From assembly GCA_001179505.1 (NCBI GenBank), contig CDMY01000231.1:1-64000 (forward strand): DNA of 64,000 nt, given 5' to 3'. Under the pieces are notes generated by a model, which was not told where the DNA came from, searched no databases, and worked only from the letters and a program-made list of their open reading frames with translations. Within the stretch, counting starts at the first letter, position 1. Each line of letters starts with the position of its first letter. The DNA comes from Vitrella brassicaformis CCMP3155 (Eukaryota; Protista; Chromerida). The position numbers and the translations under genes were made by a program. Of the stretch, positions 463 through 57,800 are shown one piece after another.

Positions 463-1159
463 GCTCTTCTCGTTAGTCGACGGATGCTGCTTCAAGTTGG
501 CTCAGTGCTGCAACACACAGGCGACCTCATTCACGCGCACACCCATCCGTTCACGCGGCACACCTGATGGGCGACACCTCTCGAGGGGTGACACGTTGGC
601 TGCTCTATGGAGCCTGGGTCACTCCTCCGCGTCTGACTCAACGCTCCACGCCCGTGTGTTGACTATCGATATCGTGATGTGAAAAATAGTATCAATTTGT
701 TGCTTTCCTTCCTTCTTTCGCCCGTGAATTCCGGGAGCGGAGGGAGAGGCAAGCCGGGGGCCGCCAACAACCGGGGCCCCCACACGGGTGCCAGGCGGCG
801 TTGGCCGGACTGGCCTTCGCTAAGGCTGCAGGCGTGACTTCCTTGCTGTGTATGTGCGTTCATCGATGAACGCTTACTTTTTGCGATTGGTACGCCCATC
901 TCTCTGTGTCTCTCATTTTGGATCGGAGCTCCTTGGACACACCACTACACACCACCGGGCGCAGAGAATTGCGCAGGGAACAGAAGAGATCTGACACACT
1001 CACAAAGCCAGACAGACATAGAGACCGACAGACAAAGAGAGAAGACGCAGGCACACAAACGTGGCTGGCGAGTCACAACACGGCACAGGGACAGACACCA
1101 CCGCACCATCACGACCAAGCCACCCACCTTCCACCACTATGTTTGTGTCAGTCAGCCAG

Positions 1160-1500
1160 TCATTCTACCTGCGGCGGCATTGGCCGCACCACACCATACA
1201 CATTGCCCATCATCCTAGTGTGTGCGTTCAACTGCTTCTGGACCATCTGCACACACACACACACACACACACAAAGACACGCAGCCAGACCACAACACGA
1301 GTCTGTGTGGTGTGGTGTGTAATGTGGTGCGTACGTCGATGAGCCCATCCGTCGGCGCCCATGTTGGCGCTGCACTGGCCACCCTGACCCTCACCGCACA
1401 CGCCCTTGCCGGCGCAGAAGGCCGTCGCCAGACTGACGGAGTTCCAAGACATCAACATGCCGAGCGTCACGGCAGCTGAACAAACCCACACAGACACGCA
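1160..1500 (-). CDS. Small hypothetical protein, possibly secreted
   Basis: Hydrophobic segment AAVTLGMLMSWNSVSLATA, then FCAGKGVCGEGQGGQCSANMG, a (TG)n intron and a last exon QMVQKQLNAHTRMMGNVYGVVRPMPPQVE*. Confidence 0.3.
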
Positions 1501-3569
1501 CACAGGAGTCTCCACGGTTAGTTGGTGCATTAATATAACAACAGACAGACGCGCACAGGCCTGTCAGTGAGGCTTGGCGCCCCATGACGCCTAGCGGGGC
1601 GTCGGCCGGTGTTCATGTGGCGTGTTTGGTCCATGCATTTAGAGTGCATGGGCATGTCTAGATTGAGCACACGTATGCGTGTGTGGATGCACGTATTCAT
1701 GCGTGCACTTGTGAGTAGAATGGAAGGGGAGGGGAAGGGTCGGGCTGTGATTAGATGGGAAACTCGAGAGCGAGGAGACAGCAGACACCTGATTGTGCCG
1801 TGCTTGAGACATTGAATGCAATGACTCAATTCGACCGATTGAAACCATCACAATCGATCAGTCCCACACAGATACGCACAAACGTTGGCACACATCACAC
1901 GTCATGATGCGCCTGGCTGCAAGCTGTGTGTGTCTGTAGGCTGTTGTCTCATGACAATGGACGTGTTGGTGTTCGTAACATGCATGCAGGCCGCAGGCTG
2001 AGGGGCAGGCCGGACTCATGCATTAGTGCTCACCAACACTCCGCTCGCCAGTCTGTTACTCATTCCGCCTGTCTGCCCACATCAGTCTGAGGTCGATGGT
2101 CTGAGGCCGCTGCCGACGCGTATGTGTTGGCCAGAACCCCGCCAAATGGAAGCTGACGGCGGGTAACGCGCTGATGACGGCGGTGCTGGAGTGCCCAGAG
2201 GGAGAAGAAGTGCTGTACAGGAAGACAGACGAGTTGACTTCATCTGCGCCAACTAAATGTTGTGTCTGCTGTCCGATCTGTTGGCACGCACAATTGATGG
2301 CTCTCAAGGTGCTGCAGTCGCATCTCATGCATGCAGCTAGTATACTACTGCAGGCATCATACGCAGTGTGCTGAGGGGGGTACGGGAAACGCCATGTGTG
2401 CATCCATGTGATTTATGGCTCTTGGGTGTGCTGTGCCTCTTGGGTGTGCTGAGGCTCGCGCAGCACACATCTCATCTATCTAAACCCAAGGTGGCGTGAT
2501 GTCGTGTGTGTACAGAGACCACCTTTTTGCCTCTCGTGTGGTGTGCGCTTTGTACAGTTTTAATGCATGTTGACATCAAACCTGCATGGATGGCTGGATG
2601 CGTGTGCGGACTCGTCGCTTTCAAACTGACACCATAACCGGCTAGTGTGTCCCTGTGTGTCCCCGTGTCCATTCATCCATCCACACACGGCGACGCACAA
2701 CAGCGGACAGACGGACAGGAGACAGGCGATCACGCAGCATAATGAAACACACCAGGGACACCGAAAGGGAGAGAGAGGACTCATCCAGTCAGCCAAGTCG
2801 TTTCCTAGCTAGCTAGCAAGACACAATCCATCCATCCATCCGTGACCGGCCATGAGATTATCAGACAGACCGACAGCTGCACACACATGGATCGATCGAG
2901 CAGGCCAACCGTTCACAAATCACACACATCCACACACACGTCCATGAATGATGCGATGCATCCTACCATCCGGCCGGCCGCGCAAACTTATGGACAAGGC
3001 AGCCAGGCACCCATGCAGCGAACGAATCCATGTGTGTTGTGTTGTTGTGTATGTGTGACCTCCTCCCCCCCCCTCTCTCTCTCTCTCTCTCTCCCTCTCT
3101 CTCCTCGCCCCTCTGTCTACCTGTAGGAAGTCCCCTGTATGTACATATTCATCCGTTGGCTGCAACAGACACCACACAAACGCACACACACAACAGGCGG
3201 GAAGCCATAAATTGACAAGCGGGGGCGCTCTTACTTACCACGCATTTACCCTCCGCTGCGTCGCAAACGCAGCCGGCTCTTGCTTCGGAGCGGAGGCGAC
3301 CGCATTCAGCTCCATCAATCCTCAGAGTTCCATCCTCCCGGCCCTGGCACTCTTGGTTATTGTACTCGTTCGTGCACGCTGACGCACACACTCACAAACA
3401 CACGAACGAGCGCATGAATGGAGTCCGCACATATCATGAGTTAGTTCGTTACGTACGATTGTCGTCCTGCTCGGCGCTGCGGTCCACTTCGAGCGACTCG
3501 AAGGCATCCCACACTGCCTCGCTCGGGAGATCAGCCGGGAAGTTCCTGAGAGAGCAAGAGAGTGAGGGA

Positions 3570-22930: not shown

Positions 22931-24724
22931 TCCACGACAAGATTGCTTGATTGGTCCCTACCTGATGTGGGTGGGGAGCTATCCAAAGAGACGAAAAGAG
23001 CCTCCATGCAATCAAGGCTTTGCTGCGTGCTGTCTGTCTGTCGTGGCGTGTACATATGTGTGGGCGATGAGGGCCGCAGCCGGTCTGGCACTAAGGGCAT
23101 TCTTTCATGCATGCATATCATTCATGTCATGTCAGGTATCAAAGGGGGGAGGGGTAAAGGCACAGCACAGCACAGAGAGAGTGTATGTATGGTCATGTCA
23201 TTATGTATATCATCTGTACTTCTGTATACTCGCACGGCACATGCACATGTACATGTCTGTAAGTAGTGCATCCAGGCATGGTGAGCACGTGAGCACGTGA
23301 GTGAGTGAGTGAGCGAGAAACCCTGCCAGCAGGAGGACTATTCCCTCTTACACGTACGTGCGTACGCTTAATTGCACCATCAGCAGCGACACACAACCAA
23401 CCAACCAATCAATCAACCCAGCGCGACAACACGACACGACACGACACGACACGACACACACACCATGGGCAGCAGAGAGAGAGGGAGCGACGAGCGAAAA
23501 AGTTAGGTGGGCGGTGGGTGTACGTATCCAATGCACCATCCATCCCATCTGCTGTGAGTAACGAAATATGAATGGCCAACAAACCAACAACAAAGTTACG
23601 ACGAATGGACGGATCCATGTCAGTAAGCTAGGGGTCCTATCGACTCCTACGAACCAACCAACAACCATCAACCAGAGAGCGAGCGAGAGAGAGCATCGTA
23701 GTCACCCAGCTGTCTGGCCGCCTGAGTATCTATCGGTCGACATACACAGACAGACAGACAGACAGATGCCGGGCGTGGGAGATGAGTGAGAGAAACAGAT
23801 GGAGGCGGAAAAAGAGTGTGCGGTGAGGCGTGACACAACAAACATGTCTCGCTTGCTCGCTCGCTCGCTCGTCACGGTTCTTGTGCGGTGGCTGTGTGTA
23901 CACATTATACACAGCCACGAATAGCAATGATACAGATGAGTGTGAGTGTGTATGCCGGTCAGCATATATATATATGGGTACACAATGACAACGGCACGAA
24001 CGAGAAAGATGGAGAAATATGTAGGTCGGTGCGGTGGGCTGGTGGGTCGACACAACGAATGCACAACTTGTCTTCCCTCGCTCGCCCGCCCCTTGTGTGT
24101 GAGTGTGTGAGTGTGTGTGTGCGATGGTGTGATATATGCGATGTGGCCCCATGACGCAAAATACACACCCCACACATGTGATATCTATCGACTTGCTCCT
24201 CACTCACTCACTCACCTGCTGACTTCCTCCTCGCCCCGCCCCCCTGCACGAGACATCAAATCAAATGAATAGCATGTATGCATGCATGCATACAACTGCG
24301 GACCCACGCACGCACACTCACACTCATGCAAATGTCACGTAGTAGTATAGTGTAGCACATCCATAGGGGCATGTACATACGTATGTACGTATGTACACAT
24401 GTGCTCACGTACTCATTCATGTGTATAAACCATCCACGTCACTCACTCACTAACGCACACACCACCACCCACCCACCCAAATAGTCAGTCAATAAGTCAG
24501 TCAGTAAGTCAGTAAGTCAGTCAGTCGCCAAGTGTCGGTTACAAAACGATGACACCACAGCACAGAACAGCAGGCAGGTCGACAGGTATATGTCAGACAT
24601 CCATATGGCAATCCATCCATCCATCCATCCACGCTATCACATCACATCCACTTGCGATCGATCCATCGGCCACGCATGCCATGCATGCGATCGATCGATC
24701 ATATCCTTCATCACCCACCATCAC

Positions 24725-27700
24725 TCACTCCTCGTCGCACTCGTCCACCCGCATCAGGATCGACAACTGCCTGCTCAACTCAATGGCCCGCTCGAGTGCT
24801 CGGGGGGACACCTTTGCTCGGCCTTGCTCGCCAGACGCACACGAGATGAAGAGGTCGTGTGCACTGGGCCACTCGGCGCGCCTCAGATCCTCCTGCAGAT
24901 GGGCCGTGGAGATCATCAGGTGGTCGCGGGGCTCGTGTGGGGGGCACCAGTGAGAGGTAAAGCGCTGCAGACAGACAGAAAGAGGGATGTGTGTGGAGGG
25001 AACTTCGTGGTTTGGTTTGTGTGTGTGCTTCGGTGGCGTGCGTACGTGTACGAGTGGCATGAGTGGGTAGAGAGGTGATGCCGCGCCCCTCTTCTTGATG
25101 GTGGCGAGGAAATGGTCCACCGACACCGACTTCAGCGGCACACCCAAGTCGCCGAGCCAATGCTCGCGCTCAGAACTGATCGTCCACAAACAAACAGGTA
25201 GGTACACACAAACAACGAATGCACTCCGCCCTCCCTCCGTGTTGTCTCTCTCTAGTGTGTGCTGTGCTGTGTCCGTACTTGGTGATGAGCTCTGGGTTGG
25301 CGAGATGGTAGACCCAATGGCGACGCTTCTCGGTCAAACACAGCCGGACCTGCACAGACACGACATGGACACAAGAACAACGAATGCATCGCGTCCACTC
25401 ACTCCCTCACTCGTCTAGGCACACTCTCTCCTCTCACCATACCATCATGGCAGCGACGACATCCACGGGGGTCGCCAGAGGCGCTTTCACGACGGGCGGC
25501 ATCTCCCCCTCCTCGAGCATTGCCATCATCAGCGCCCCGCCCACGTGCCTCTCGTCCACGTAGCCCGTCATCAGGCTCGTCATGCCGCTCGGCACTCGGT
25601 AGATGGTGCACGGCAGGCCCCTCGCCCGCGCCTTCTTGAGCACCTGCTCCGTCGACCAGTTGGTCCACGGGAGGCCGAATTGCTCGGGTGGGCAGACCTC
25701 GCGCAGGCGCTTGGTGTCGAGGGTGGTGGCCTCGCGGAGCTCCTTGCCCTGGCCAAGGACGTACTCGGGGAAGAGGGTGAGGGACGACACAAAGTGGAGG
25801 GGCTTGAGCTTGCTGGTGGTGCACAGCCGCACGATCTCCTTCATCGCGAAGGTGTTCTCGCGCAGGCGGTCGTAGCTCTGCATGAACGACTGGCCGTTGG
25901 CGAAGCCCGTGTGGAAGACCAGGTCGATCCGCTCGCACAGCTCGGCAAAGAAGTGCTCGGCCAGGTGGTTGGGCTTGAGGCCGAGATGCCGCCGCGTCAC
26001 GTGGCCGGGCACGATCATCAGCCGGCTCTGGTACTCGTCCTTCCAGATGCCCGCTTCCTGGCACGCCTCACGCACCTGCCGCAGACCCTCCTCGTCGCTG
26101 TTGGTCTGCACCAGGCAATGCACCGTCAGCCGCTCCTTGGCCTGCAGCAGCGCCACGGTGAGGAACCGGCCCACTGCTGACGTCGCGTCCGTCACGAGCA
26201 CGTGTCTGCTCTTGCGGGGTTGTGGGTGGGGGGCAGGGAGGGAGGCGACGTCGAACTTGAAGCTCTTGGCCACCTTGTTGACGTCCGTCTCGGGGTCCCT
26301 CTTCCTAGTGGTGCCGTCGTCCGTCGCGTTCGAGCCGCTGCTCTCGGTGTTGTTGGTGGCGCCGTCCCTGTGCCCCGAGAAGGGGGCGATGGGCTCCATG
26401 ACGCCCTCCTGCTCACGTTTGGCCACCAGCTGCCCAGCCAAAGCGTCCAGCGAGGGGTTGTCGAACATAGACGAGGGCGGCATGTCGATGCCCGTCATCC
26501 GCCGCACGTGCTCGCTGAACTCGGTCATGCCGATCGAGTCGAGGCCCAGATCGAGCAGTCTGCCGGAGGGCGACGGCCGCTCCTCCCCACCCACCACCGA
26601 GTGGGCGACGGACGCCAGGGAGTCGGCCAGGGCGGTCTTGCCCGTGTCGTTGGTGGATGAGGGTCGGAACGGGTCGGTGGGCGATGTGGGCTGCACGGAT
26701 GAGGCACGAGTGTCGGTGGAGGAGCGGAAGCTGGAGGGGGTGAGGGTGGAGGGGGTGAGGGTGGAGAGGGACCGTGTCGAGGCGTCGGTGAGGACCGACG
26801 GGCAGGGCGCGTTGCGGGGCGTGGACTTGGCGGTCTTGACGACGGTGTCTGCTGGTGCTGCTGCCGTGCAGAGGTCTTCGCACCACATGACGCCGCCCTT
26901 GCCGTTGGCCCGACTTCTTTGGAGCATCTGCTTGGCCTTGCTCCGCTGCAACTTGCCCGAGGTGGTCTTGGGCAGGACGCGCGGCTTGAGCAGCCAGATC
27001 TGCTGCACGGGCAGACCCACCTTCATGCTCGCCGCACGGGCCACCTCCTCTGCGATCGTCCGCAGCACCGCGTCCTTGTCGCCATGGCGATCCGTCGTGC
27101 ACGCCAGCATCGACACAAACCGACCAAACCCGCCAAAGTGCCGCCTGCTCGCCCTCTTGCTGCTCCCCTTGGCCCCACCCGCCATGGCCAGCGCCCTGAC
27201 CCCCTCCGGCCGCAGCTCACATGCGATGCCCATGCCCTCTCCCTGCTCGCTCTCCACGGGGAAGGCCGCGCAGCAGCCGGGTCGCACGACGTCACACTTG
27301 GCCTCGATGGCCTCCTCGATGTCCTGAGGGATGTACTTGCGCCCCCTGACGATGATCATGTCCTTGGCGCGGCCGGCGATGAAGAGCTCGCCCTTGTAGA
27401 GGAAGCCGGTGTCGCCGGTCCGCAGGAAGGGCCCTTGCTGCTCGGGTGCGTTGGTGGTGCCCGAGAGGGTGGCCCGGAACGTCTGATGGGTCTGCTCCGC
27501 CATGCCGAAGTAGCCCTTGGCCGTAGAGGGAGACGACAGCCACACCTCACCCACCTGGCCCTCGGGAAGCAGGTGGTGGGTGGACGAATCCACTATCGCA
27601 ACTGATGGATGGATGGATGAAGGAAAAAAGAGAGAGAGCACATGAGGGCAACTCAGTGGGCTTGTCTGTGTGTGTGTGTGGGCATACCAGTAGTGTCGGT

Positions 27701-48803: not shown

Positions 48804-51800
48804 CTAGAACAAACATTCACGCCCGTCACCTGGGCGCTGCCCCATCAAATTGCGGGGCTCCACAGCGCCCAGTGAGTCGAAGTGAGTGTCCTGGGGCGCC
48901 GGGCGGTTTCTCGAGAGACAAAACAAGCCATGGAGACAGGCGGAAGACGGAAGACATCCGGTTCGCCGCCTGACGCAGACGTCGGAGTCATAGTACCTCT
49001 CGAGGGCCGTCCTGACCTGCTCCTCGGTCAGATGCACTTCCTCCAGCGCATAGCTGCGCTTCAGCTTGTCCTTGTGTTCCTTGTTCTCGTTGATGAATGC
49101 CCACATGCTGTCTCTGGCCCGCTTGTTCATCGGTATCTTGAAGTGCCTGTAGATCTTCTTAACCATCTCCATGGGACCGTTGATCAGGTCGTCGTAGTGC
49201 ACGTCCAAAAATTGCTTCTGGAGGTGAGAATTCTTCGCGCGAAAATCCATGGAATGGTCGACCATGTTGGCTATCACCTCAAGCTCCTTCTGGCCCACCG
49301 CGTCGAGGTCCACCTCCTCAATCAGCTCCTTCCGCACCGCGCCTACGAGGCTGCACCATGAGGCGACAACATCCTTCGGACTTCTGTACACACACACATC
49401 ACACACACACACGCGACAGTGAGCGTGTCTGTGTGCAATCGGGGTGGTTGGCGCTGACCTGTGTACGTGGACGACGAGCGCGTTAGGGTATGTCTCGAAC
49501 AGTGCATCGAGTGCGAATAGCTGGAAGGGCATGTTGAGGAGCCACCTGTTTCCGGCCCGCTGCCACTGCAGGTGCTGTAGAAACCGCTTGTGAAAGGCGT
49601 ATCCGCGGTTCATCTCTTTGCAGTCGTCCTTGAAGAGCCACTCCTTGTATGCGGGTGTGTCGAACTCCACGCACATACTGTAGGATCTAAAGCAGTGCTC
49701 GAAGATCATGTAGTCCTCGTCTGGCCAGTCGGCCCTCTGCGCGTGGATGCGCATCCAGTCGTCGCTCATGCTCCGAACGAAATCCAGCGCCTCTTGCGCA
49801 GGGGCCAGCCGGGGATCCTACAGGCGTACACACACACACACACACGCGCGCGCGCGCGTCACCAGTGCTCGTGTGCTCGTGCGGCATGCGGCCCGGTGCT
49901 GACACGTACCTGGTCCCAGTCCCATGGGGCGTCGTTGGGTACGTTGTGCGGTCTGTATGATCCGTCCTCGCCGTATGGACAGTACATCTCACTGTACATG
50001 GGGGCCCTCATAGCAGGGTCTTGTGCGATCAGCCGCTGCAGTAAGGTGGCGCCCATCCGATCGAGACCCACGATAATCAGCGGCTGTCTGATCTGCTGCC
50101 GCTCTATCTCGGGGTTGAGGCGCGCCACCTCCTTCATGAACAGGAGGTTCTTGAACATCTGCCGGGACGTGCGGAACATCGCCAATTCCCCGAGGAAGGA
50201 CAGCTTCACCTCCTGATTGGCGCTTTTGGCCAGCAGCCGTGCTGGCTCCAGGTAGAAGTCCTCACCTTCCGCCTCGGTCGCGAAGTCCCTGAGACCGTCG
50301 GTGTGCTTCCGCGCCCACTCGAGTGCGTGGTCAGCATCGATGATGACGGAGTTGCCCTTGGGAGCGAAGAAGCGAAACTCGATTTGGTACTGGAAGGAGG
50401 CCCGGAAGGTGTCCTTGACGGGTGGCCATGCCATGTGTGGGAGCTCGTCGAAGATGTTATGGGTGCGGATGGGGAACGGCTCGGTCCGCTCGTCGCAGTC
50501 GAACCAGTAGGACCGCCAGTACTGCATGAGGAGCACGAACTTGAAGACGGGCGACTCGGGACCGCGTTTCTTGACGGCGTCGAGGAAGGTGTCGATCTTG
50601 ACGCCATAGTACTTGATGCCCAGCTCGTCTGCCCACGCCTCAAGCTGACCCCTGCACACGGACATAGGATACGTCAAATCGATGCATTCGATTGAGCCCT
50701 GTTGCCTTACTGTTTGACGACGGTGGTGTCGATGAGGTGGTACAGCCAGTGCTTCCGCCGCTCAAGGAACGAAGCCTCCACCTATACGACGAACGAATGA
50801 CCGGACGAATGAAGCCCCCACACAAGCTTTGCGACCTACCAGCATCTCAGCAATGGTGTCCACCGGTGTGAAAGGCGCCGTAGACGCGCCGACGGGGAAC
50901 ATGCCCTCCTCGATGGAGCTGACAGTCAGCGCCGTGGCGAAGTCGTCCTTGTTGGTGTACCCTGTCCGCCAGCCGACGAACGTGCTGGGGAGTCGGTACA
51001 CGCACACGGGCAGGCCCATGTCGCGAGCCTTGCGCAGCACTTGCTCGGCGGCCCACTTGCTCCAGGGGTAGCCCATGCGGAGAGGGGGGAAGAACTTCTG
51101 CATCTCCTTGGGGTCGGGGGAGGAGTCCTCGGTGATGAGCCGGTCGTCGAACTCCTGGCTGAAGCAGGCAACGAAGGCCGGGAAGATGCCCAGGGTGGAG
51201 ACGTGGTGGAGCGACTTGAGGCGGTAGGTGGTGCACAACCGCAAGACGCCCTTGAGGGCGAGTGTGTTGGTTGCACGGAGACGAGCGTAGTTGCTCAGGA
51301 GGTTGACATTGCCGCCAGTGTGGTGGACCTGAATGAAGAAACCACACACAGAGAGTACATGTCAAGCCTTCGATCACTGCTTCCCCGTGCTGCGCATGTG
51401 CAAGTCACCATGTCGATGGTTCGGCAGAGTTCCACGAATTTGTCTTCGCCGACGCCGAGGTCCTCCTTGGTGAAGTCTCCGGGTAGCGCCTCGATGCGGC
51501 TGGCGTACTCCTCCTTCCACACCTTGGCCTCATTGCACGCGTCGCGGATGCGCTGCATGGCGTGCTTCTCGTCGTTGGCCCGCACCAGGCACGTGACCTT
51601 CAGGTTCTCACTCCCCGGCCGGTCCAGCAGGCATACCACTTGCAGGCGGCCGACAAACCCCGTTACGCCGGTGAGCAGCACGTTCTTAACTTGCTTGGGG
51701 TGCCGCATGGGCAACAGAGTGTTGACGTCGAACTGCAGCCACTCTGTGAGGTCCTTGATGTCGTCCATCGGGTCGACCGTCTTCTCTCGGGGCTTGCCAC

Positions 51801-54800
51801 CGCCCACGGCTCCTCGGATGGCCTCGTCGTAGTCGGTCGCCGCGCCGTCCTGTGCCGCTGCCGGGGCGCCGTTGAGTGGCGATAGCTTGTCGGAGCTGGA
51901 TACGTTGACGAGGGACGAGCGCATCTTGTCCCATGAGTCGTGGAGGCGCCTGAAGTCCTCCTCGTCCCGCACCTGGCAGACGTCGAGTGCGAGTCGGAGG
52001 TCGGTCTCCTGCGCCATGGCCTCGACGGATGGGTACTTAGCCTCGAAGACGTCGAGGTACTGGAGGTAGCGCTTGGAGCCGCTGAAGGCGCTCTTGAGCC
52101 ACCCCTCGACCGTCATGTCGTGGTTGTCGACCTCCGTGGATGAGGGCGCCTTGCCGCTGCCCTGCTCGTCCTTGGCCGCGTCGCCCGCCGCCGCCAGCCG
52201 CTCCCTGTCCACACCTGACACCTCCTCCACCTTGTCGACATCCCCCTTCTTGCCGATCTTGGTCGGCCGCCCGTGGGCAGTGTCGAGGATGAAGTCGGCA
52301 ATCACTTCGATGGTCGGGTTCTCGAACACCAGTGTCTGAGGCAGCTTGACGCCCGTCAAGTCCGCAACCGAGTTGCGGAACTCCACAGCCCCCAGTGAGT
52401 CGAGACCAAGGTCCATGAGTGGTGCGTCGATCGGGGGCTTCTCAGCAGACCCCGACACCTGCTGCGCCAGCGAGCTCAGCAGACCCGACAGGTCCAGCTT
52501 GCTGATGGCCTTGAGGTCGATCTTGCCACCGCCACTCTCGGCCGACGCTGCCATGGGGATCTCTGAGAAGAAAGCGGGCATGTCGCCATACCGCCGCAGG
52601 AAGGTGGCCCACTTGAGGCCCTGGCAGCCGAACACTGACGGCCCGCGCATACCAGGCGCCAGAGACTGCTGCCGCATGACGTCCCCCATGACACGAAGAA
52701 CAAGATCGTTGGTGATGCCGCGCATTCCCGCCTTGTCGAGGTGCTGCTTGAGTTCCACCGCCATGCCCTGCTGGATCCACGGGCCCCACTGAATGCTCTG
52801 CGCCGCGAGCTTCTTGGATCGCCGGTACTCGGTGAGGGCGTCCAGGCATGAGTTGGCCGCCGAGTAGTTGGCCTGACCAAAGTTGCCGACTAGTGAGGCG
52901 ACGGAAGAGAACATCATGAAGTGGTCGAGAGGGGTCTCCTCGTCGAGCGACAGCTCGTGGAGGTACCAGGCACCCATCACCTGCACACACACACGAGGCA
53001 GAAGCGATGGATGAGGAACACTTCTCGTGAGGGTCTCCTGAGTGTTTGACTGGCTCGCTAGCTCGCTGGCTTAAAAGTGAAGTGACTGTCTGACTGAGTG
53101 AGAGAGCGACGGAATTGGTGAGTGCCTGACTGCCTGCCTGCCTGCCTGCCTTAATGGCGCACGCAAAAAAGGATGGGGTGTGTGAGTAACTGGCGATGCG
53201 AGTGAGTAAGAGGAAGAGAGAGGGCAGCAGTCACGGCCTGGCTGGCTGCCTCACAACCCAAGTGATTGACTGACTGACTGACTGAATCAGTCAATGAATG
53301 AGTCAGTGGGAGTAGAAGCAAGCTTGGGGGTCTCACTCACCTTTGGCAAGTAGACCTTGTCCACCTTGNNNNNNNNNNNNNNNNNNNNNNNNNNNNNNNN
53401 NNNNNNNNNNNNNNNNNNNNNNNNNNNNNNNNNNNNNNNNNNNNNNNNNNNNNNNNNNNNNNNNNNNNNNNNNNNNNNNNNNNNNNNNNNNNNNNNNNNN
53501 NNNNNNNNNNNNNNNNNNNNNNNNNNNNNNNNNNNNNNNNNNNNNNNNNNNNNNNNNNNNNNNNNNNNNNNNNNNNNNNNNNNNNNNNNNNNNNNNNNNN
53601 NNNNNNNNNNNNNNNNNNNNNNNNNNNNNNNNNNNNNNNNNNNNNNNNNNNNNNNNNNNNNNNNNNNNCCCGCACCTAGCAGACGTCGAGTGCGAGTCGG
53701 AGGTCGCTCTCCCGCGCCATGGCCTCGACGGATGGGTACTTGGCCTCGAAGACGTCGAGGTACTGAAGGTAGCGCCTGGAGCCGCTGAAGGCGCTCTTGA
53801 GCCACTCCTCGACCGTCATGTCGTGGTAGTCGACCTCCGTGGATGAGGGCGCCTTGCCGCTGCCCTGCTCGTCCTTGGCCGCGTCGCCCGCCGCCGCCAG
53901 TCGCTCCCTGTCCACACCTGACACCTCTTCCACCTTGTCGACATCCCCCTTCTTGCCGATCTTGGTCGGCCGCCCGTGGGCAGTGTCGAGGATGAAGTCG
54001 GCAATCACTTCGATTGTCGGGTTCTCGAACACCAGTGTCTGCGGCACCCTGACGCCCGTCACCTCCGCAATCGAGTTGCGGAACTCCACGGCCCCCAGTG
54101 AGTCGAGACCAAGGTCCATGAGTGGTGCGTCGATCGGGGGCTTCTCAGCAGACCCCGACACCTGCTGCGCCAGCGAGCTCAGCAGACCCGACAGGTCCAG
54201 CTTGCTGATGGCCTTGAGGTCGACCTTGCCACCGCCACTCTCGGCCGACGCTGCCATGGGGATCTCTGAGAAGAAGGCGGGCATGTCGCCATACCGCCGC
54301 AGGAAGATGGCCCACTTGAGGCCCTGGCAGCCGACCACTGACGGCCCGCGCATACCAGGCGCCAGAGACTGCTGCCGCATGACGTCCCCCATGACACGAA
54401 GACCGAGTTCGTTGGTGATGCCGCGGATGCCGACCTTGTCGAGATGCTGCTTGAGCTCGGCTGCCATTCCCTGCTCGATCCACGGTCCCCACTGGATGCT
54501 CTGACACGGCAGCCCCTGCGACTTGCGGTAGAGGGCGAGGGCGTCCAGACACGAGTTGGCCGCAGAGTAGTTGGTCTGGCCGAAGTTGCCGAGCAGGGAG
54601 GCGACGGACGAGAACATCATGAAGTGGTCGAGAGGGATCCTCTTGCCGAGGGACAGCTCATGGATGTTCCATGCACCCATCACCTGCACACACGATAGAG
54701 GAAAGGGATGAGTCAACAACCTCGTTGGGGAACGATTCATGTTCGGGTTCCCTCTCACCTTTGGCAAGTAGACCTTCTCCACCTTGTCTTTGGTCTGGTT

Positions 54801-57800
54801 GTTGAGGGCAGCGTCGTCAAGCCTCTCAGCTGCGTGGAAGACTCCACGGACTGGGTTCTTGGGCAGCTTCTTCTTGAGGTCAGCGAACAGATTCTCGCAC
54901 TCGTCCTTCTTGGACACATTCACGGCCATGCAGTATATGGTCGCCTTGGAGCGGCCATGAGGCTCGGGCGCCGTCAGCTTCGTCCACAGATCGGAAGCAG
55001 CAACGGCATCAGTCGGCTTTCCGCGCCTGGATAGCAGAGCGACATTTTTTGCTCCCTCCTCCACCAGCCAGTCTGCGACAAGCAGTCCGAGTCCGCCGAG
55101 TCCTCCGGTGATGACATAGCATCCGTCAGTCTGGCGGCCGGCCGGTGTCGCCTCGTCGCGCTGTGTGTCGTCTGTGTGGGGCGGTGCGATGGCTGAGGGT
55201 ATTTGTATGATGACCTTGCCGATGTGCTGCGCTCTCTGCATAAACCTGAAGGCCGCGATGCCGCCGGTAACGTTGTCTGCGGTGCTCATGTCGAATGTGT
55301 GGAGGGGGATGGGTTTGATCTTGCCGCTGTCGACCAGGCCTCGGACACGATCGAGCATGGCGCCGAACCAGTTGGGATCTTGCTCCATCATGTGATCGAC
55401 GGTGATGGCCTCGTACATGGCCAAGTCGGGCCGCCTGGCAAGGACCTCCTCTTTGCTCCAGATGCCGCGCTTGCCGAGCTCCATGAAGCGGCCCTTGAGC
55501 GCCATGGCGTCGAGCGAGAAGGGAATGAAGTCCTCGATGAGGCAGTTGAGGACGACGTCGATCTTGCTGTTGGCCTTGTGCATGTCGGCCTGGAACTGGC
55601 TGGCGTCGCGCGAGCTCGTGACCAAGTGCACGCCCTGCTGTCGTAGGAAGTCCTGTTTGTGCTGGCTGCCCGCCGAGCCATAGACATTGGCCCCGACGGC
55701 CTTGCAGTACTGGATGGCCGCAAGCCCGACGCCGCCCGATGCCGCGTGGACGAGAACGTTGTCTCCCTTGGTGACCTTGGCGAGCTCTCGGAATGCGACC
55801 TCGACCGTCACAAAGACGACCGGCAGGGCGGCCGCCTCTTCGAAGGTCATCGATGCGGGCTTGATGGCCATCAGGTTGGCGTCAGTCGTCACGTACGTCC
55901 GCAGGCAGCCCGGCGCCACGCCGTAGACGTCATCCCCAACACACAAGTGACTCACGCCCTCCCCCACAGCCACTACCGTACCCGAGCAGTCGCCGCCCGG
56001 CGGGCCGGGGTCGCCAGGATACAGACCCATCACGTTCAACACGTCGCGGAAATTCAAACCGATCGCACGAACACGGACCTCGATGCAGCCCACAGGGGGC
56101 GGGATGCGGGCGGCCTGGGCCAGCGGTCTTAGCTCGAGGTCGGTGATGGCTCCTCGCTGTGGCATGTAGAGCTCCACGGCTCCCCTCAGGTCAACCTTGG
56201 CCTTCTGCATCCTCGAGTAGAAGCATGCTGGCTGGCTTGGGGTCTTTTCGGTCGGGCGTGTATTGCGAAGGGCCACCTCTGCCTCATAGCCCACGGTGTC
56301 CCCTTGCGCGTTGAGCAGGATGGCCATCTGTTCTATGAAGCCGTCGACGGTGTCGGGCGAGGTGGGGTCGATGTCGACGCAGCCCATCTTGATGAGAGTG
56401 CCGATGTTGTTCTCCAGCTCCAGTCGGGCCGTCTTGGCGAAGCCCCACAGGCCGGCGTGGCGCGGTATCTCTGGCAGCGTTTCGTCGGGGAGCGCGAGCT
56501 GCGTGCCGCGAGTGACGAGCCAGATGGCAGGGAGTTCGACGTTAGTGCCCAGCTTGAGGATGACCTGGGCCATCCTGAGGGCCTCGCTGACCACCACAAC
56601 CGGGTCGGACCGCTTCTCGAGGCTGCCCATGTGGAGGACGCAGTCCCACTTGTTCTTGTCGGCAAGGATCTTCTCCATGTCCATGGCGTCAGGTGTCTCG
56701 CCGTACGCGATGAGCCGCGACTCTCTGCTCTTCCCGCACTCCACCAGTCTGCTGTACAGCACCTTCTTCCAGGCAGCCGGCACGCCAAACAAAAGCCACC
56801 TTGGTTCAGCGGCAGCAGCCTCCTCCTCAGCAGCAAGCTCCTTGCTTGGCTCGGCCTGTTTCCACGTGACCTCCCAGAGGATGTCCCGGGGTATGTCTGC
56901 AGGCGGCGTGGTGTCCATCTGCCGCAGACTAACGTTCTTGAGGTAGGCGGCGATGCGGCCCCTGCTGTCCTGAATGACCACATCGATGGTCGCAGCACGG
57001 TCCTCGCGCTTGAGCAGGCGGACGTGACTCCACAGCTCGCTCGACGGGGCGATGCGAGCCAGTGAGACCCTCTCCGCCCCCACGGGCACCAGAGCTGCCT
57101 TGGTCTTCCTCTTGCCGGACTGGTCGGCCGCGAGTATGGCGGCGGCTGACTGCAGGGCGCCGTCGAGGATGGCGGGGTGCAGGCGGAAGCCGCCCTCGAA
57201 TGGCTTGATGGGCGGGTCCAACTTGAGCAGGGCCAGCGCCTGGTCATCCGACACGAACAGCTCTGTCACCGTCTGGAACCGCGGGCCGTACGCCAAACCG
57301 ATCTCCTTGAGCTGCGTGTAGAACTCTGACAGCGGGGCGGTCTTGTTGCACCGGTGCTTGAGGGTGGTGAGGTCCTCCACCAGGTCACTCTCGCTGTCGT
57401 CCACGTGGGCGACCTTGACCAGACGGCCGGTGGCGTGCGACACGAAGTCCTCCTCGCCGGGGGCTTGTGTAGTGATCTCGACGGCCATGGGGGGCATGGC
57501 GGCGCTGCTGTCAGTCGTTGGCTGCTTCTCGACGGTGATGCGGATGGTGGGCATCTTGGGGTCGGGCTGCTTGTCATCGGGCTTGGGCAGCATGAGCGGC
57601 CGCTCGAACGACACATCCTCCAGATGCACAAGCTCTGCAGCCGATATCTTGGCCCCCCTCTCCACCTGCGCTGCTGCCAGACCGGCGCTCGCCAGGATAT
57701 CAATGAACCCTGCGCCAGGCATCAGAGGCACGCCTGCAAACGCATCAAGATATACACAAAGCAAATGCTTCAACCAGCAAGCCGCATGTGTCTGGTCTCA

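What the first reader, a model, noticed from the sequence alone, without database searches (positions are those of the whole stretch)
48804..51700. PKS ends in an active reductase fused to a sulfotransferase-like domain with altered catalytic motifs
Seen: the R domain runs in frame into an Stf-type sulfotransferase fold. Its 5'-phosphosulfate loop is GLDRMGATLL (typical GLPRSGTTLL), and the usual WxLKxPxH reads WLLNMPFQ (Lys to Asn, His to Gln), while the 3'-phosphate motif HR-SPKDVVAS is kept. Known: ST-TE termini (CurM type) make terminal olefins. An R-ST order would instead suggest release as an alcohol followed by sulfation. Inference: either an alkyl-sulfate-forming terminus with unusual chemistry, or a pseudo-ST that binds PAP/CoA-like ligands or product.
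Basis: partly seen in the sequence, partly recalled or inferred. Interest (0 to 1): 0.72.

Follow-up and report, generated by a model that had tools for sequence, protein, structure and literature searches.

The report
PKS tail: reductase plus crippled sulfotransferase
A giant lipid-building enzyme gene of the alga Vitrella brassicaformis ends in a chain-releasing reductase fused to a sulfotransferase-shaped domain that has lost key catalytic residues but is still expressed and conserved; the reductase-sulfotransferase ending itself has been known since 2013.

Summary
On the minus strand, a spliced type I PKS/FAS gene ends ACP - thioester reductase (R) - Stf1/Stf9-type sulfotransferase (ST). 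One exon (50651-49910) carries both the R C-terminus and the ST phosphosulfate loop. My splice model is identical to GenBank protein P0040. RNA-derived contigs show four of the five tail introns spliced.

Among 198 homologues the Lys column is K in 186/195 and the His column is H in 191/195. This copy is the only one lacking both.

A sister paralogue in the same genome (P0037) keeps the canonical GLNRTGTT / WLLKMPFH / HRDPKD. The lost Lys aligns with the transition-state Lys of tyrosylprotein sulfotransferases.

The domain still folds confidently (pLDDT 95) and is under purifying selection (omega 0.23). I read it as a probable pseudo- or crippled sulfotransferase kept for a non-catalytic role. 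It is not a decaying pseudogene.

The R-ST order is not new. SwfB of sponge symbionts and the coccidian FAS/PKS tails were described in 2013. This scan had already reported other degenerate R-ST tails on other DNA of this genome. No activity has been tested. Verdict: a new member of a known kind, of moderate interest.

The parts
52288..52470 (-). Last ACP (PP-binding), P0040 residues 170-230, which hands the chain to the R domain
   Evidence: Pfam PF00550, 43 bits; coordinates from the exon map
50843..51675 (-). Thioester reductase core (NAD_binding_4), P0040 435-685, interrupted by intron 51408-51329. TGVTGFVG lies at 51672-51649 and the Y-x-x-x-K of GYPWSK at 51073-51059
   Evidence: Pfam 188 bits. 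The motifs match the >=90% consensus of 18 R-ST homologues. The intron joint is seen in RNA contigs of X1 and X6
50411..50842 (-). R C-terminal subdomain, P0040 686-790. It includes micro-exon 50781-50711 and introns 50839-50782 and 50710-50652
   Evidence: Alignment to R-ST homologues. The micro-exon is confirmed by paralogue transcript P0001 and by RNA joints 50779>50838 and 50650>50710
49910..50651 (-). Single exon encoding the R C-terminus, linker, ST N-terminal helical part and 5'-phosphosulfate loop. This is the physical R-ST fusion point
   Evidence: Open frame with no stop. RNA and DNA contig 49928-50405 has 0 mismatches in all four runs
48978..50350 (-). Stf1/Stf9-type sulfotransferase-like domain, P0040 811-1212, with introns 49909-49818 and 49458-49384
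   Evidence: Pfam PF13469, 110 bits. AF2 pLDDT 95.2, pTM 0.94. Foldseek 2ZQ5 TM 0.80/0.88 and 2Z6V 0.83/0.85
50039..50068 (-). Degenerate 5'-PSB loop GLDRMGATLL (family consensus GLNRTGTTFL). Arg908, Gly910 and Thr912 are kept; Thr909 is Met and Thr911 is Ala
   Evidence: Column counts: T/S 169/191 at 909 and 176/191 at 911
49988..49990 (-). Glu931 (YSEMY), the conserved Glu about 20 residues after the PSB loop. It is a candidate general base and is retained
   Evidence: E in 171/187 homologues. It lies within 2-3 residues of the TPST Glu in the profile alignment, so the equivalence is inferred, not shown
49521..49544 (-). WLLNMPFQ in place of WLLKMPFH: Lys1052 to Asn and His1056 to Gln
   Evidence: K 186/195, H 191/195. 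The Lys aligns to the TPST 'NKDPF' Lys. The codons have 0 mismatches in DNA and RNA contigs
49479..49490 (-). YPNA in place of YPDA: Asp1069 to Asn
   Evidence: D in 183/194 homologues
49359..49463 (-). 3'-phosphate-binding motif HR|SPKDVVAS, spanning intron 49458-49384. Arg1077 and Ser1085 are kept; the usual Asp1078 is Ser
   Evidence: R 192/194, S 183/194, D 141/194. The spliced RNA contig in X6 joins 49459 to 49383 with 0 mismatches
48804..48953 (-). 49-residue C-terminal extension plus stop codon. The paralogue's stop codon is deleted here, so the frame runs into former 3' UTR
   Evidence: DNA alignment to L001; protein alignment

Best explanation
This is the tail of a Vitrella brassicaformis type I FAS/PKS. 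Its order is KS?-AT-DH-ER-KR-ACP-(KR remnant)-ACP-R-ST. It belongs to the alveolate and SwfB class of R-ST termini.

In that class, the inferred and never assayed logic is as follows. The NAD(P)H-dependent R domain releases the ACP thioester as an aldehyde or primary alcohol, and the fused Stf1-like ST sulfates it with PAPS.

In this paralogue the R domain looks intact. The ST domain has lost the transition-state Lys, a near-invariant His, a near-invariant Asp and two hydroxyls of the phosphosulfate loop. It keeps the fold, the loop Arg/Gly/Thr, the putative Glu base and the 3'-phosphate Arg/Ser.

The most likely reading is that the ST is catalytically dead or strongly impaired for sulfuryl transfer. 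It would be kept as a folded non-catalytic partner of R, for example as a structural or docking element, a product-binding site, or a PAP(S)-binding site. The chain would then leave as an unsulfated alcohol or aldehyde, while the sister enzyme P0037 keeps the sulfating version.

Shown here: architecture, splicing, transcription, residue losses, fold prediction and purifying selection. Inferred: loss of activity, the retained role and the product.
For: 1. Architecture: Pfam and the exon model equal GenBank protein P0040.
2. One exon spans the R/ST junction, and RNA contigs show four of the five tail introns spliced, with 0 mismatches in the copy-specific ST part.
3. K1052N, H1056Q and D1069N are the only unique departures among 41 columns that are >=85% conserved in 198 homologues.
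4. Polarised by 16 outgroups, 7 columns that are >=90% conserved are lost uniquely in this copy and 0 uniquely in sister P0037.
5. The family Lys aligns with the TPST Lys. That Lys is described as stabilising the transferring sulfate, and its Ala mutants are nearly inactive (PMC10951654).
6. Sister paralogue P0037/P0001 and the apicomplexan and bacterial R-ST proteins keep the canonical motifs.
7. AF2 gives pLDDT 95.2, and the top structural hits are Stf1 and Stf9.
8. ST omega is 0.23 (bootstrap CI 0.17-0.32), about 0.29 on this branch; ML branch lengths are 0.163 versus 0.102.
9. Other long PKS/FAS tails also carry degenerate ST motifs, for example P0046, P0059, P0063, P0067, P0068, P0070 and P0074. 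Keeping an inactivated ST fold therefore recurs.
Against: - No enzyme assay exists for any R-ST protein, so even the canonical function is inferred.
- The loop Arg, Gly and last Thr, the Glu and the 3'-PB Arg/Ser are intact. PAPS binding and some residual activity are therefore possible.
- From memory, not checked here: the equivalent Lys is less critical in some cytosolic sulfotransferases.
- The role of the conserved His in Stf1-type enzymes is not established.
- I could not inspect model coordinates, so a compensating residue (K1109, K1159, R1186 or H1194) cannot be excluded.
- The branch-specific omega rests on an assumed equal split of dS.
- The loss of the stop codon and the 1.6-fold faster branch could also mark early decay.
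Confidence: 0.6

Rival explanations
1. The ST is still an active PAPS-dependent sulfotransferase that makes an alkyl sulfate. It would use the retained Arg908 and Glu931 and some substitute for the missing Lys and His.
For: Arg908, Gly910, Thr912, Glu931, Arg1077 and Ser1085 are kept. Purifying selection has omega 0.23. The fold prediction is confident. His1186 is replaced by Arg, which keeps a positive charge.
Against: The Lys is K in 186/195 homologues and the His is H in 191/195. The few other proteins lacking the Lys also have further degenerate motifs. The losses fall on active-site columns (7 unique versus 0 in the sister). No new basic residue appears next to the motifs. Ala mutants of the TPST Lys are nearly inactive.
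Confidence: 0.22
2. The ST part is in early decay with no remaining function: a relic dragged along because it is fused to a useful PKS.
For: The branch is 1.6-fold longer than the sister's. The stop codon is lost, giving a 49-residue read-through. The 3' end is the most diverged part of the gene (65-75% nucleotide identity). Gene conversion with the paralogue stops at the ST boundary.
Against: There is no frameshift or stop in 402 codons despite dS of about 0.56. Omega is 0.23, with an upper CI of 0.32 (about 0.39 when scaled to this branch). Introns are spliced correctly in RNA. AF2 pLDDT is 95.
Confidence: 0.13
3. Artefact: the odd residues come from assembly or sequencing error, or the ST exons belong to a separate gene.
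For: The GenBank model starts inside the PKS, so annotation here is imperfect.
Against: Contigs from four studies (two DNA-like, two RNA-like) match the motif codons with 0 mismatches. R and ST share exon 50651-49910, and the splice joints are seen. The paralogue transcript P0001 spans R to the ST end in one ORF.
Confidence: 0.02

Closest known systems
SwfB (R + ST didomain protein) of the swf PKS/FAS clusters of sponge symbionts / Poribacteria POR_0550 (Della Sala et al. 2013, PMC3908369)
   Same: A thioester reductase is directly followed by an Stf1-like sulfotransferase. Bacterial homologues of 807-846 aa (P0053-P0057) align over the whole R-ST unit, including the R C-terminal part. The authors proposed alkyl sulfate as the product.
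   Different: SwfB is a free-standing bacterial protein acting in trans with SwfA. Here R-ST is fused to the PKS in a eukaryote. The bacterial homologues aligned here (P0053-P0057) keep WL[LF]KMPFH and the NRTGTT or HRTGTT loop; this copy does not. Neither has been assayed.
C-terminal R-ST of apicomplexan type I FAS/PKS (Eimeria, Cyclospora, Cardiosporidium, Gregarina; Toxoplasma/Eimeria PKS1 of oocysts, PMC3760245)
   Same: The ACP-R-ST tail is the same, with 42-48% identity over the ST region. These are the closest relatives outside Vitrella.
   Different: The apicomplexan proteins retrieved here keep the canonical loop, Lys and His wherever the motif scan found them. This copy has lost the Lys and His.
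Sister paralogue in the same genome: CEL94036.1 (P0037, locus L001; transcript P0001)
   Same: Intron positions are the same. Nucleotide identity is 95-100% through ACP-R and protein identity is 77% over the ST domain (82% over the whole R-tail-to-ST stretch). The two are sister to each other with 100% support.
   Different: P0037 has GLNRTGTT, WLLKMPFH, YPDA, HRDPKD and a normal stop codon.
Mycobacterial Stf1 (2ZQ5) and Stf9 (2Z6V) sulfotransferases
   Same: These are the best solved-structure matches by sequence profile (E 2e-119 and 3e-86) and by fold (TM 0.80-0.88). They share the N-terminal helical part and the motif layout.
   Different: They are stand-alone bacterial enzymes with canonical Lys and His (VLKNPSH, SLKMPSH).
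CurM / olefin synthase ACP-ST-TE termini (4GBM, 4GOX)
   Same: A sulfotransferase domain is embedded at a PKS terminus.
   Different: The order and logic differ: ST acts on a beta-hydroxyacyl-ACP before a thioesterase to give a terminal alkene (summarised in PMC3908369). Here there is no TE and R comes first. The structural match is only distant (TM 0.27-0.33).

Membership tests
Sulfotransfer_3 / Stf1-Stf9-type PAPS sulfotransferases | Sequence-profile and fold membership | tested here: met
   PF13469, 110 bits against a cut-off of 27. The family profile (alignment A1, 53 homologues including this copy) hits 2ZQ5 at E 2e-119. AF2 model against 2ZQ5: TM 0.80/0.88.
Sulfotransfer_3 / Stf1-Stf9-type PAPS sulfotransferases | Intact 5'-phosphosulfate loop G-x-x-R-[TS]-G-[TS]-T | tested here: inconclusive
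   The loop reads G-L-D-R-M-G-A-T. Arg, Gly and the last Thr are kept. The two other hydroxyl positions (T/S in 169/191 and 176/191 homologues) are Met and Ala.
Sulfotransfer_3 / Stf1-Stf9-type PAPS sulfotransferases | Lys of W-x-L-K-x-P (aligns with TPST2 Lys158) and the His four residues later | tested here: not met
   Asn1052 and Gln1056. The family has K in 186/195 and H in 191/195. Alignment to TPST.
Sulfotransfer_3 / Stf1-Stf9-type PAPS sulfotransferases | 3'-phosphate-binding Arg and Ser (H-R-x-P...S) | tested here: met
   Arg1077 and Ser1085 are present; the columns are R 192/194 and S 183/194.
Sulfotransfer_3 / Stf1-Stf9-type PAPS sulfotransferases | PAPS-dependent sulfuryl transfer | not testable with these tools
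   Needs an enzyme assay.
R-ST chain-release termini (SwfB / alveolate FAS-PKS type) | NAD_binding_4 thioester reductase followed in the same polypeptide by an Stf1-like ST, with the conserved R C-terminal and linker segment | tested here: met
   P0040 domain order. Alignment with 18 R-ST proteins over R, linker and ST. A single exon spans the junction.
R-ST chain-release termini (SwfB / alveolate FAS-PKS type) | R domain with cofactor and catalytic motifs (TGxxGxxG, Y-x-x-x-K) | tested here: met
   TGVTGFVG and GYPWSK match the >=90% consensus.
R-ST chain-release termini (SwfB / alveolate FAS-PKS type) | Expressed as one transcript | tested here: met
   Joints at 51409|51328, 50840|50781, 50711|50651 and 49459|49383 in RNA-like runs X1 and X6. 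No contig spans intron 49909-49818, because a (TG)n repeat is skipped there. The paralogue transcript P0001 is continuous.
CurM/OLS-type ACP-ST-TE olefin-forming termini | ST placed between ACP and a thioesterase | tested here: not met
   No thioesterase was found. R precedes ST and the protein ends after ST.

The most novel reading that the evidence does not exclude
The Stf1-like fold at R-ST termini has a second, non-catalytic job, such as holding the released lipid, dimerising or docking the R domain, or sensing PAP(S). That would explain why alveolate PKS/FAS genes repeatedly keep it under purifying selection after sulfotransfer is lost. This copy and its canonical sister P0037 would be a natural matched pair for testing the idea.
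Probability: 0.4. Interest if true: 0.55.

Novelty: new member of a known kind. Interest (0 to 1): 0.36.

Why it matters
R-ST tails sit on some of the most abundant proteins of coccidian oocysts and on sponge-symbiont PKSs, yet no R-ST enzyme has been assayed in the literature I could search.

Vitrella offers two sister genes, 95-100% identical through ACP-R, whose ST domains differ at the catalytic residues. That gives a ready-made comparison for two questions. Do these termini make alkyl sulfates? What does the ST fold contribute when it cannot transfer sulfate?

By itself, this copy adds one more degenerate example to a pattern the scan had already seen in this genome.

Tried and rejected
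- Searching the ST exons alone against solved structures gave only Stf1 and Stf9. A family profile was needed to reach TPST and CurM ST.
- A literature search for the CurM ST catalytic residues found nothing in the searchable library. My recollection of Glu60 and Lys133 is therefore not used as evidence.
- A search for 'alkyl sulfate' together with PKS, ST and reductase found no paper.
- Model coordinates are not exposed to scripts. I could not measure whether another basic residue reaches the active site, so I listed copy-specific basic residues instead.
- No other ST copy lies in this window (tblastn).
- A codon-level outgroup was not attempted. The next paralogue (P0046) is only 46% identical, so branch polarity was taken from protein trees and outgroup consensus.
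- The first iqtree run failed on the thread count and was repeated. One motif table had an off-by-one index and was redone.
ORFs were given by reference, and the spliced protein was used only through the database entry P0040, which is identical to my model.
Full report
**What is there.** The finding lies on the minus strand of a eukaryotic, intron-bearing gene.
- Pfam on the raw ORFs gives DH-ER-KR-ACP (53676-57773). It then gives a KR C-terminal fragment, ACP and the N-half of NAD_binding_4 (51295-52992), and the C-half of NAD_binding_4 (50762-51349).
- Sulfotransfer_3 is split over 49859-50677 and 48804-49769.
- Upstream ORFs carry acyltransferase domains.
- Reading the DNA, I placed GT-AG introns at 51408-51329, 50839-50782, 50710-50652, 49909-49818 and 49458-49384. 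This includes a 71-nt micro-exon at 50781-50711.
- The translation is 100% identical over 1269 residues to GenBank protein P0040 of Vitrella brassicaformis CCMP3155. The organism name given in earlier scan notes is thereby confirmed.
ORFs were given by reference, and P0040 served as the reference for the spliced product.

**Is R really fused to ST?** Yes.
- Exon 50651-49910 alone encodes the R C-terminal subdomain, the linker, the ST N-terminal helices and the phosphosulfate loop, without a stop.
- Of the public runs that hold this DNA, I laid four on the window. Two (X3, X4) behave as DNA, with contigs running through intron 49458-49384.
- Two others (X1, X6) behave as RNA. They show joints at 51409|51328, 50840|50781 and 50711|50651. 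X6 also has a 959-nt contig joining 49459 to 49383 and running on to 48605 with no mismatch.
- The ST part differs from its paralogue by 15-35% at nucleotide level, so these contigs belong to this copy.
- No contig spans intron 49909-49818, where a (TG)n repeat was skipped. For the sister gene, a transcript ORF (P0001) runs continuously from R to the ST end.
- A further joint, 52976>53337, shows that the mRNA continues upstream of the annotated Met of P0040. The tail therefore belongs to the larger PKS.

**The motifs.**
- I aligned 198 homologues gathered by a word search, a region search and the exhaustive representative search to an HMM of the domain.
- Loop column counts: Arg 187/191, Gly 177/191, the two middle hydroxyl positions T/S 169/191 and 176/191, the last Thr T/S 186/191.
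- Other column counts: putative base Glu 171/187, Lys 186/195, His 191/195, Asp of YPDA 183/194, 3'-PB Arg 192/194 and Ser 183/194.
- This protein keeps Arg, Gly, the last Thr, Glu, Arg and Ser. It has Met and Ala in the loop, and Asn, Gln and Asn for the Lys, His and Asp.
- It is the only one of the 199 proteins lacking both Lys and His.
- Of 41 columns that are >=85% conserved, it departs uniquely at exactly these three: Lys, His and Asp.

**What the lost residues do.**
- A profile of the family aligns its W-x-L-K-x-P Lys with the 'NKDPF' Lys of tyrosylprotein sulfotransferases, and its loop Arg with the TPST loop Arg.
- For tick TPST and human TPST2, these residues are described as general acid (Arg74/78), general base (Glu95/99) and transition-state stabiliser (Lys154/158). 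Their Ala mutants are nearly inactive (PMC10951654).
- The equivalence of Glu931 with the TPST Glu is only approximate in the alignment.
- The role of the family's His is not established. I treat its loss as suggestive because of its 98% conservation.

**Fold.** AlphaFold2 on P0040:811-1212 with 53 homologues gives pLDDT 95.2 and pTM 0.94.
- Foldseek's best matches are M. tuberculosis Stf1 (2ZQ5, TM 0.80/0.88) and M. avium Stf9 (2Z6V, 0.83/0.85).
- TPSTs, CurM ST (4GBM, 0.33) and Stf0 (1TEX, 0.29) are far behind.
- 'Stf-type' is therefore right in the Stf1/Stf9 sense.
The only copy-specific basic residues are K1109, K1159 and H1194, plus R1186 replacing a conserved His.

**Sister paralogue and selection.** CEL94036.1 (P0037) sits at the end of contig CDMY01000201.1 (locus L001). 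It has the same intron positions and canonical GLNRTGTT, WLLKMPFH, YPDA and HRDPKD.
- ML trees place the two as sisters with 100% support. ST branch lengths are 0.163 (this copy) and 0.102 (sister).
- Polarised by 16 outgroups, this copy has 30 derived changes in the ST core against 13 in the sister. Seven losses in columns that are >=90% conserved are unique to this copy, and none is unique to the sister.
- Codon comparison gives ST dN 0.131, dS 0.560 and omega 0.23 (bootstrap CI 0.17-0.32). That is about 0.29 on this branch if dS is split equally.
- The domain is therefore constrained, but the constraint on the active-site columns has gone.

**Mosaic pattern.**
- From about 52700 to about 50350 the two genes are 95-100% identical (dS 0.05-0.10). 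From 50350, which is the first residue of the ST domain, identity drops to 65-89%.
- This looks like a gene-conversion tract that homogenises ACP-R and stops at the R/ST boundary. It leaves the two ST domains free to differ.
- The paralogue's TAA stop is deleted here, which adds 49 residues.

**How unusual is the architecture?** Not very.
- The representative search returned many long proteins (2,150-6,729 aa) whose last ~550 residues match the R-tail-ST unit, plus bacterial proteins of about 800-840 aa.
- Named relatives include 'type I fatty acid synthase' of Cardiosporidium and Gregarina, and proteins of Eimeria and Cyclospora.
- Della Sala et al. 2013 described SwfB as R+ST. They noted that its only contiguous R-ST homologues were the C-termini of two coccidian type I FAS, and they proposed an alkyl sulfate product (PMC3908369).
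- Bushkin et al. 2013 drew Toxoplasma and Eimeria PKS1 with a terminal ST (PMC3760245).
- I found no paper assaying an R-ST enzyme.
- Degenerate ST motifs recur in other long tails (P0046, P0004, P0059, P0063, P0067, P0068, P0070, P0074).
- This scan had already reported degenerate R-ST tails on other DNA of this genome. I checked its 2013 lead myself.

**Verdict.**
I put about 0.6 on dead or strongly impaired sulfotransfer with a retained non-catalytic role, about 0.2 on a still active enzyme, and about 0.13 on early decay.
- The R-ST order is already known.
- The useful new points are three: the matched canonical/degenerate sister pair, the selective loss of active-site columns under continuing purifying selection, and the conversion tract ending at the domain boundary.

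Noticed in passing
window 53669-54600 versus 51966-52897 (minus-strand gene): There is an internal tandem duplication inside the PKS gene. A 932-nt segment, encoding a KR C-terminal part plus ACP, is repeated at 93% identity. This gives ...KR-ACP-(KR remnant)-ACP-R-ST. It may also explain the zero read depth laid at 53425-54400.
   Followed up: partly
window ~52700-50350 versus L001 ~940-3290: Identity to the paralogue is mosaic: 95-100% (dS 0.05-0.10) through ACP-R, then 65-89% from the first ST residue onward. This looks like a gene-conversion tract that ends at the R/ST domain boundary.
   Followed up: partly
window 52976-53337: An RNA contig joint skips 360 nt (GT..AG on the minus strand). 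The transcript therefore continues upstream of the annotated start of GenBank protein P0040, and the annotation splits one PKS into pieces.
   Followed up: partly
window 48804-48953: The paralogue's TAA stop is deleted here, so the frame reads 49 extra residues into former 3' UTR.
   Followed up: yes
window 49820-49864, 49383-49418, 53080-53158: (TG)n / (CA)n microsatellites sit inside the introns of this gene. Assemblies and Logan contigs break at them.
   Followed up: no
P0063 (6729 aa) and P0071 (4498 aa), from the representative search: These two giant proteins end in degenerate ST domains. Their lengths equal those listed for Chromera velia Cvel_19857.t1 (type I FAS) and Cvel_3734.t1 in PMC7464705. 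The match is by length only; identity was not verified.
   Followed up: no
window 24656-25364 (minus strand): A weak tblastn match of the R C-terminal part of P0001 (22-31% identity) falls here. It belongs to the separate FAAL-ACP-reductase gene that the scan noted earlier as having a dead R domain.
   Followed up: no
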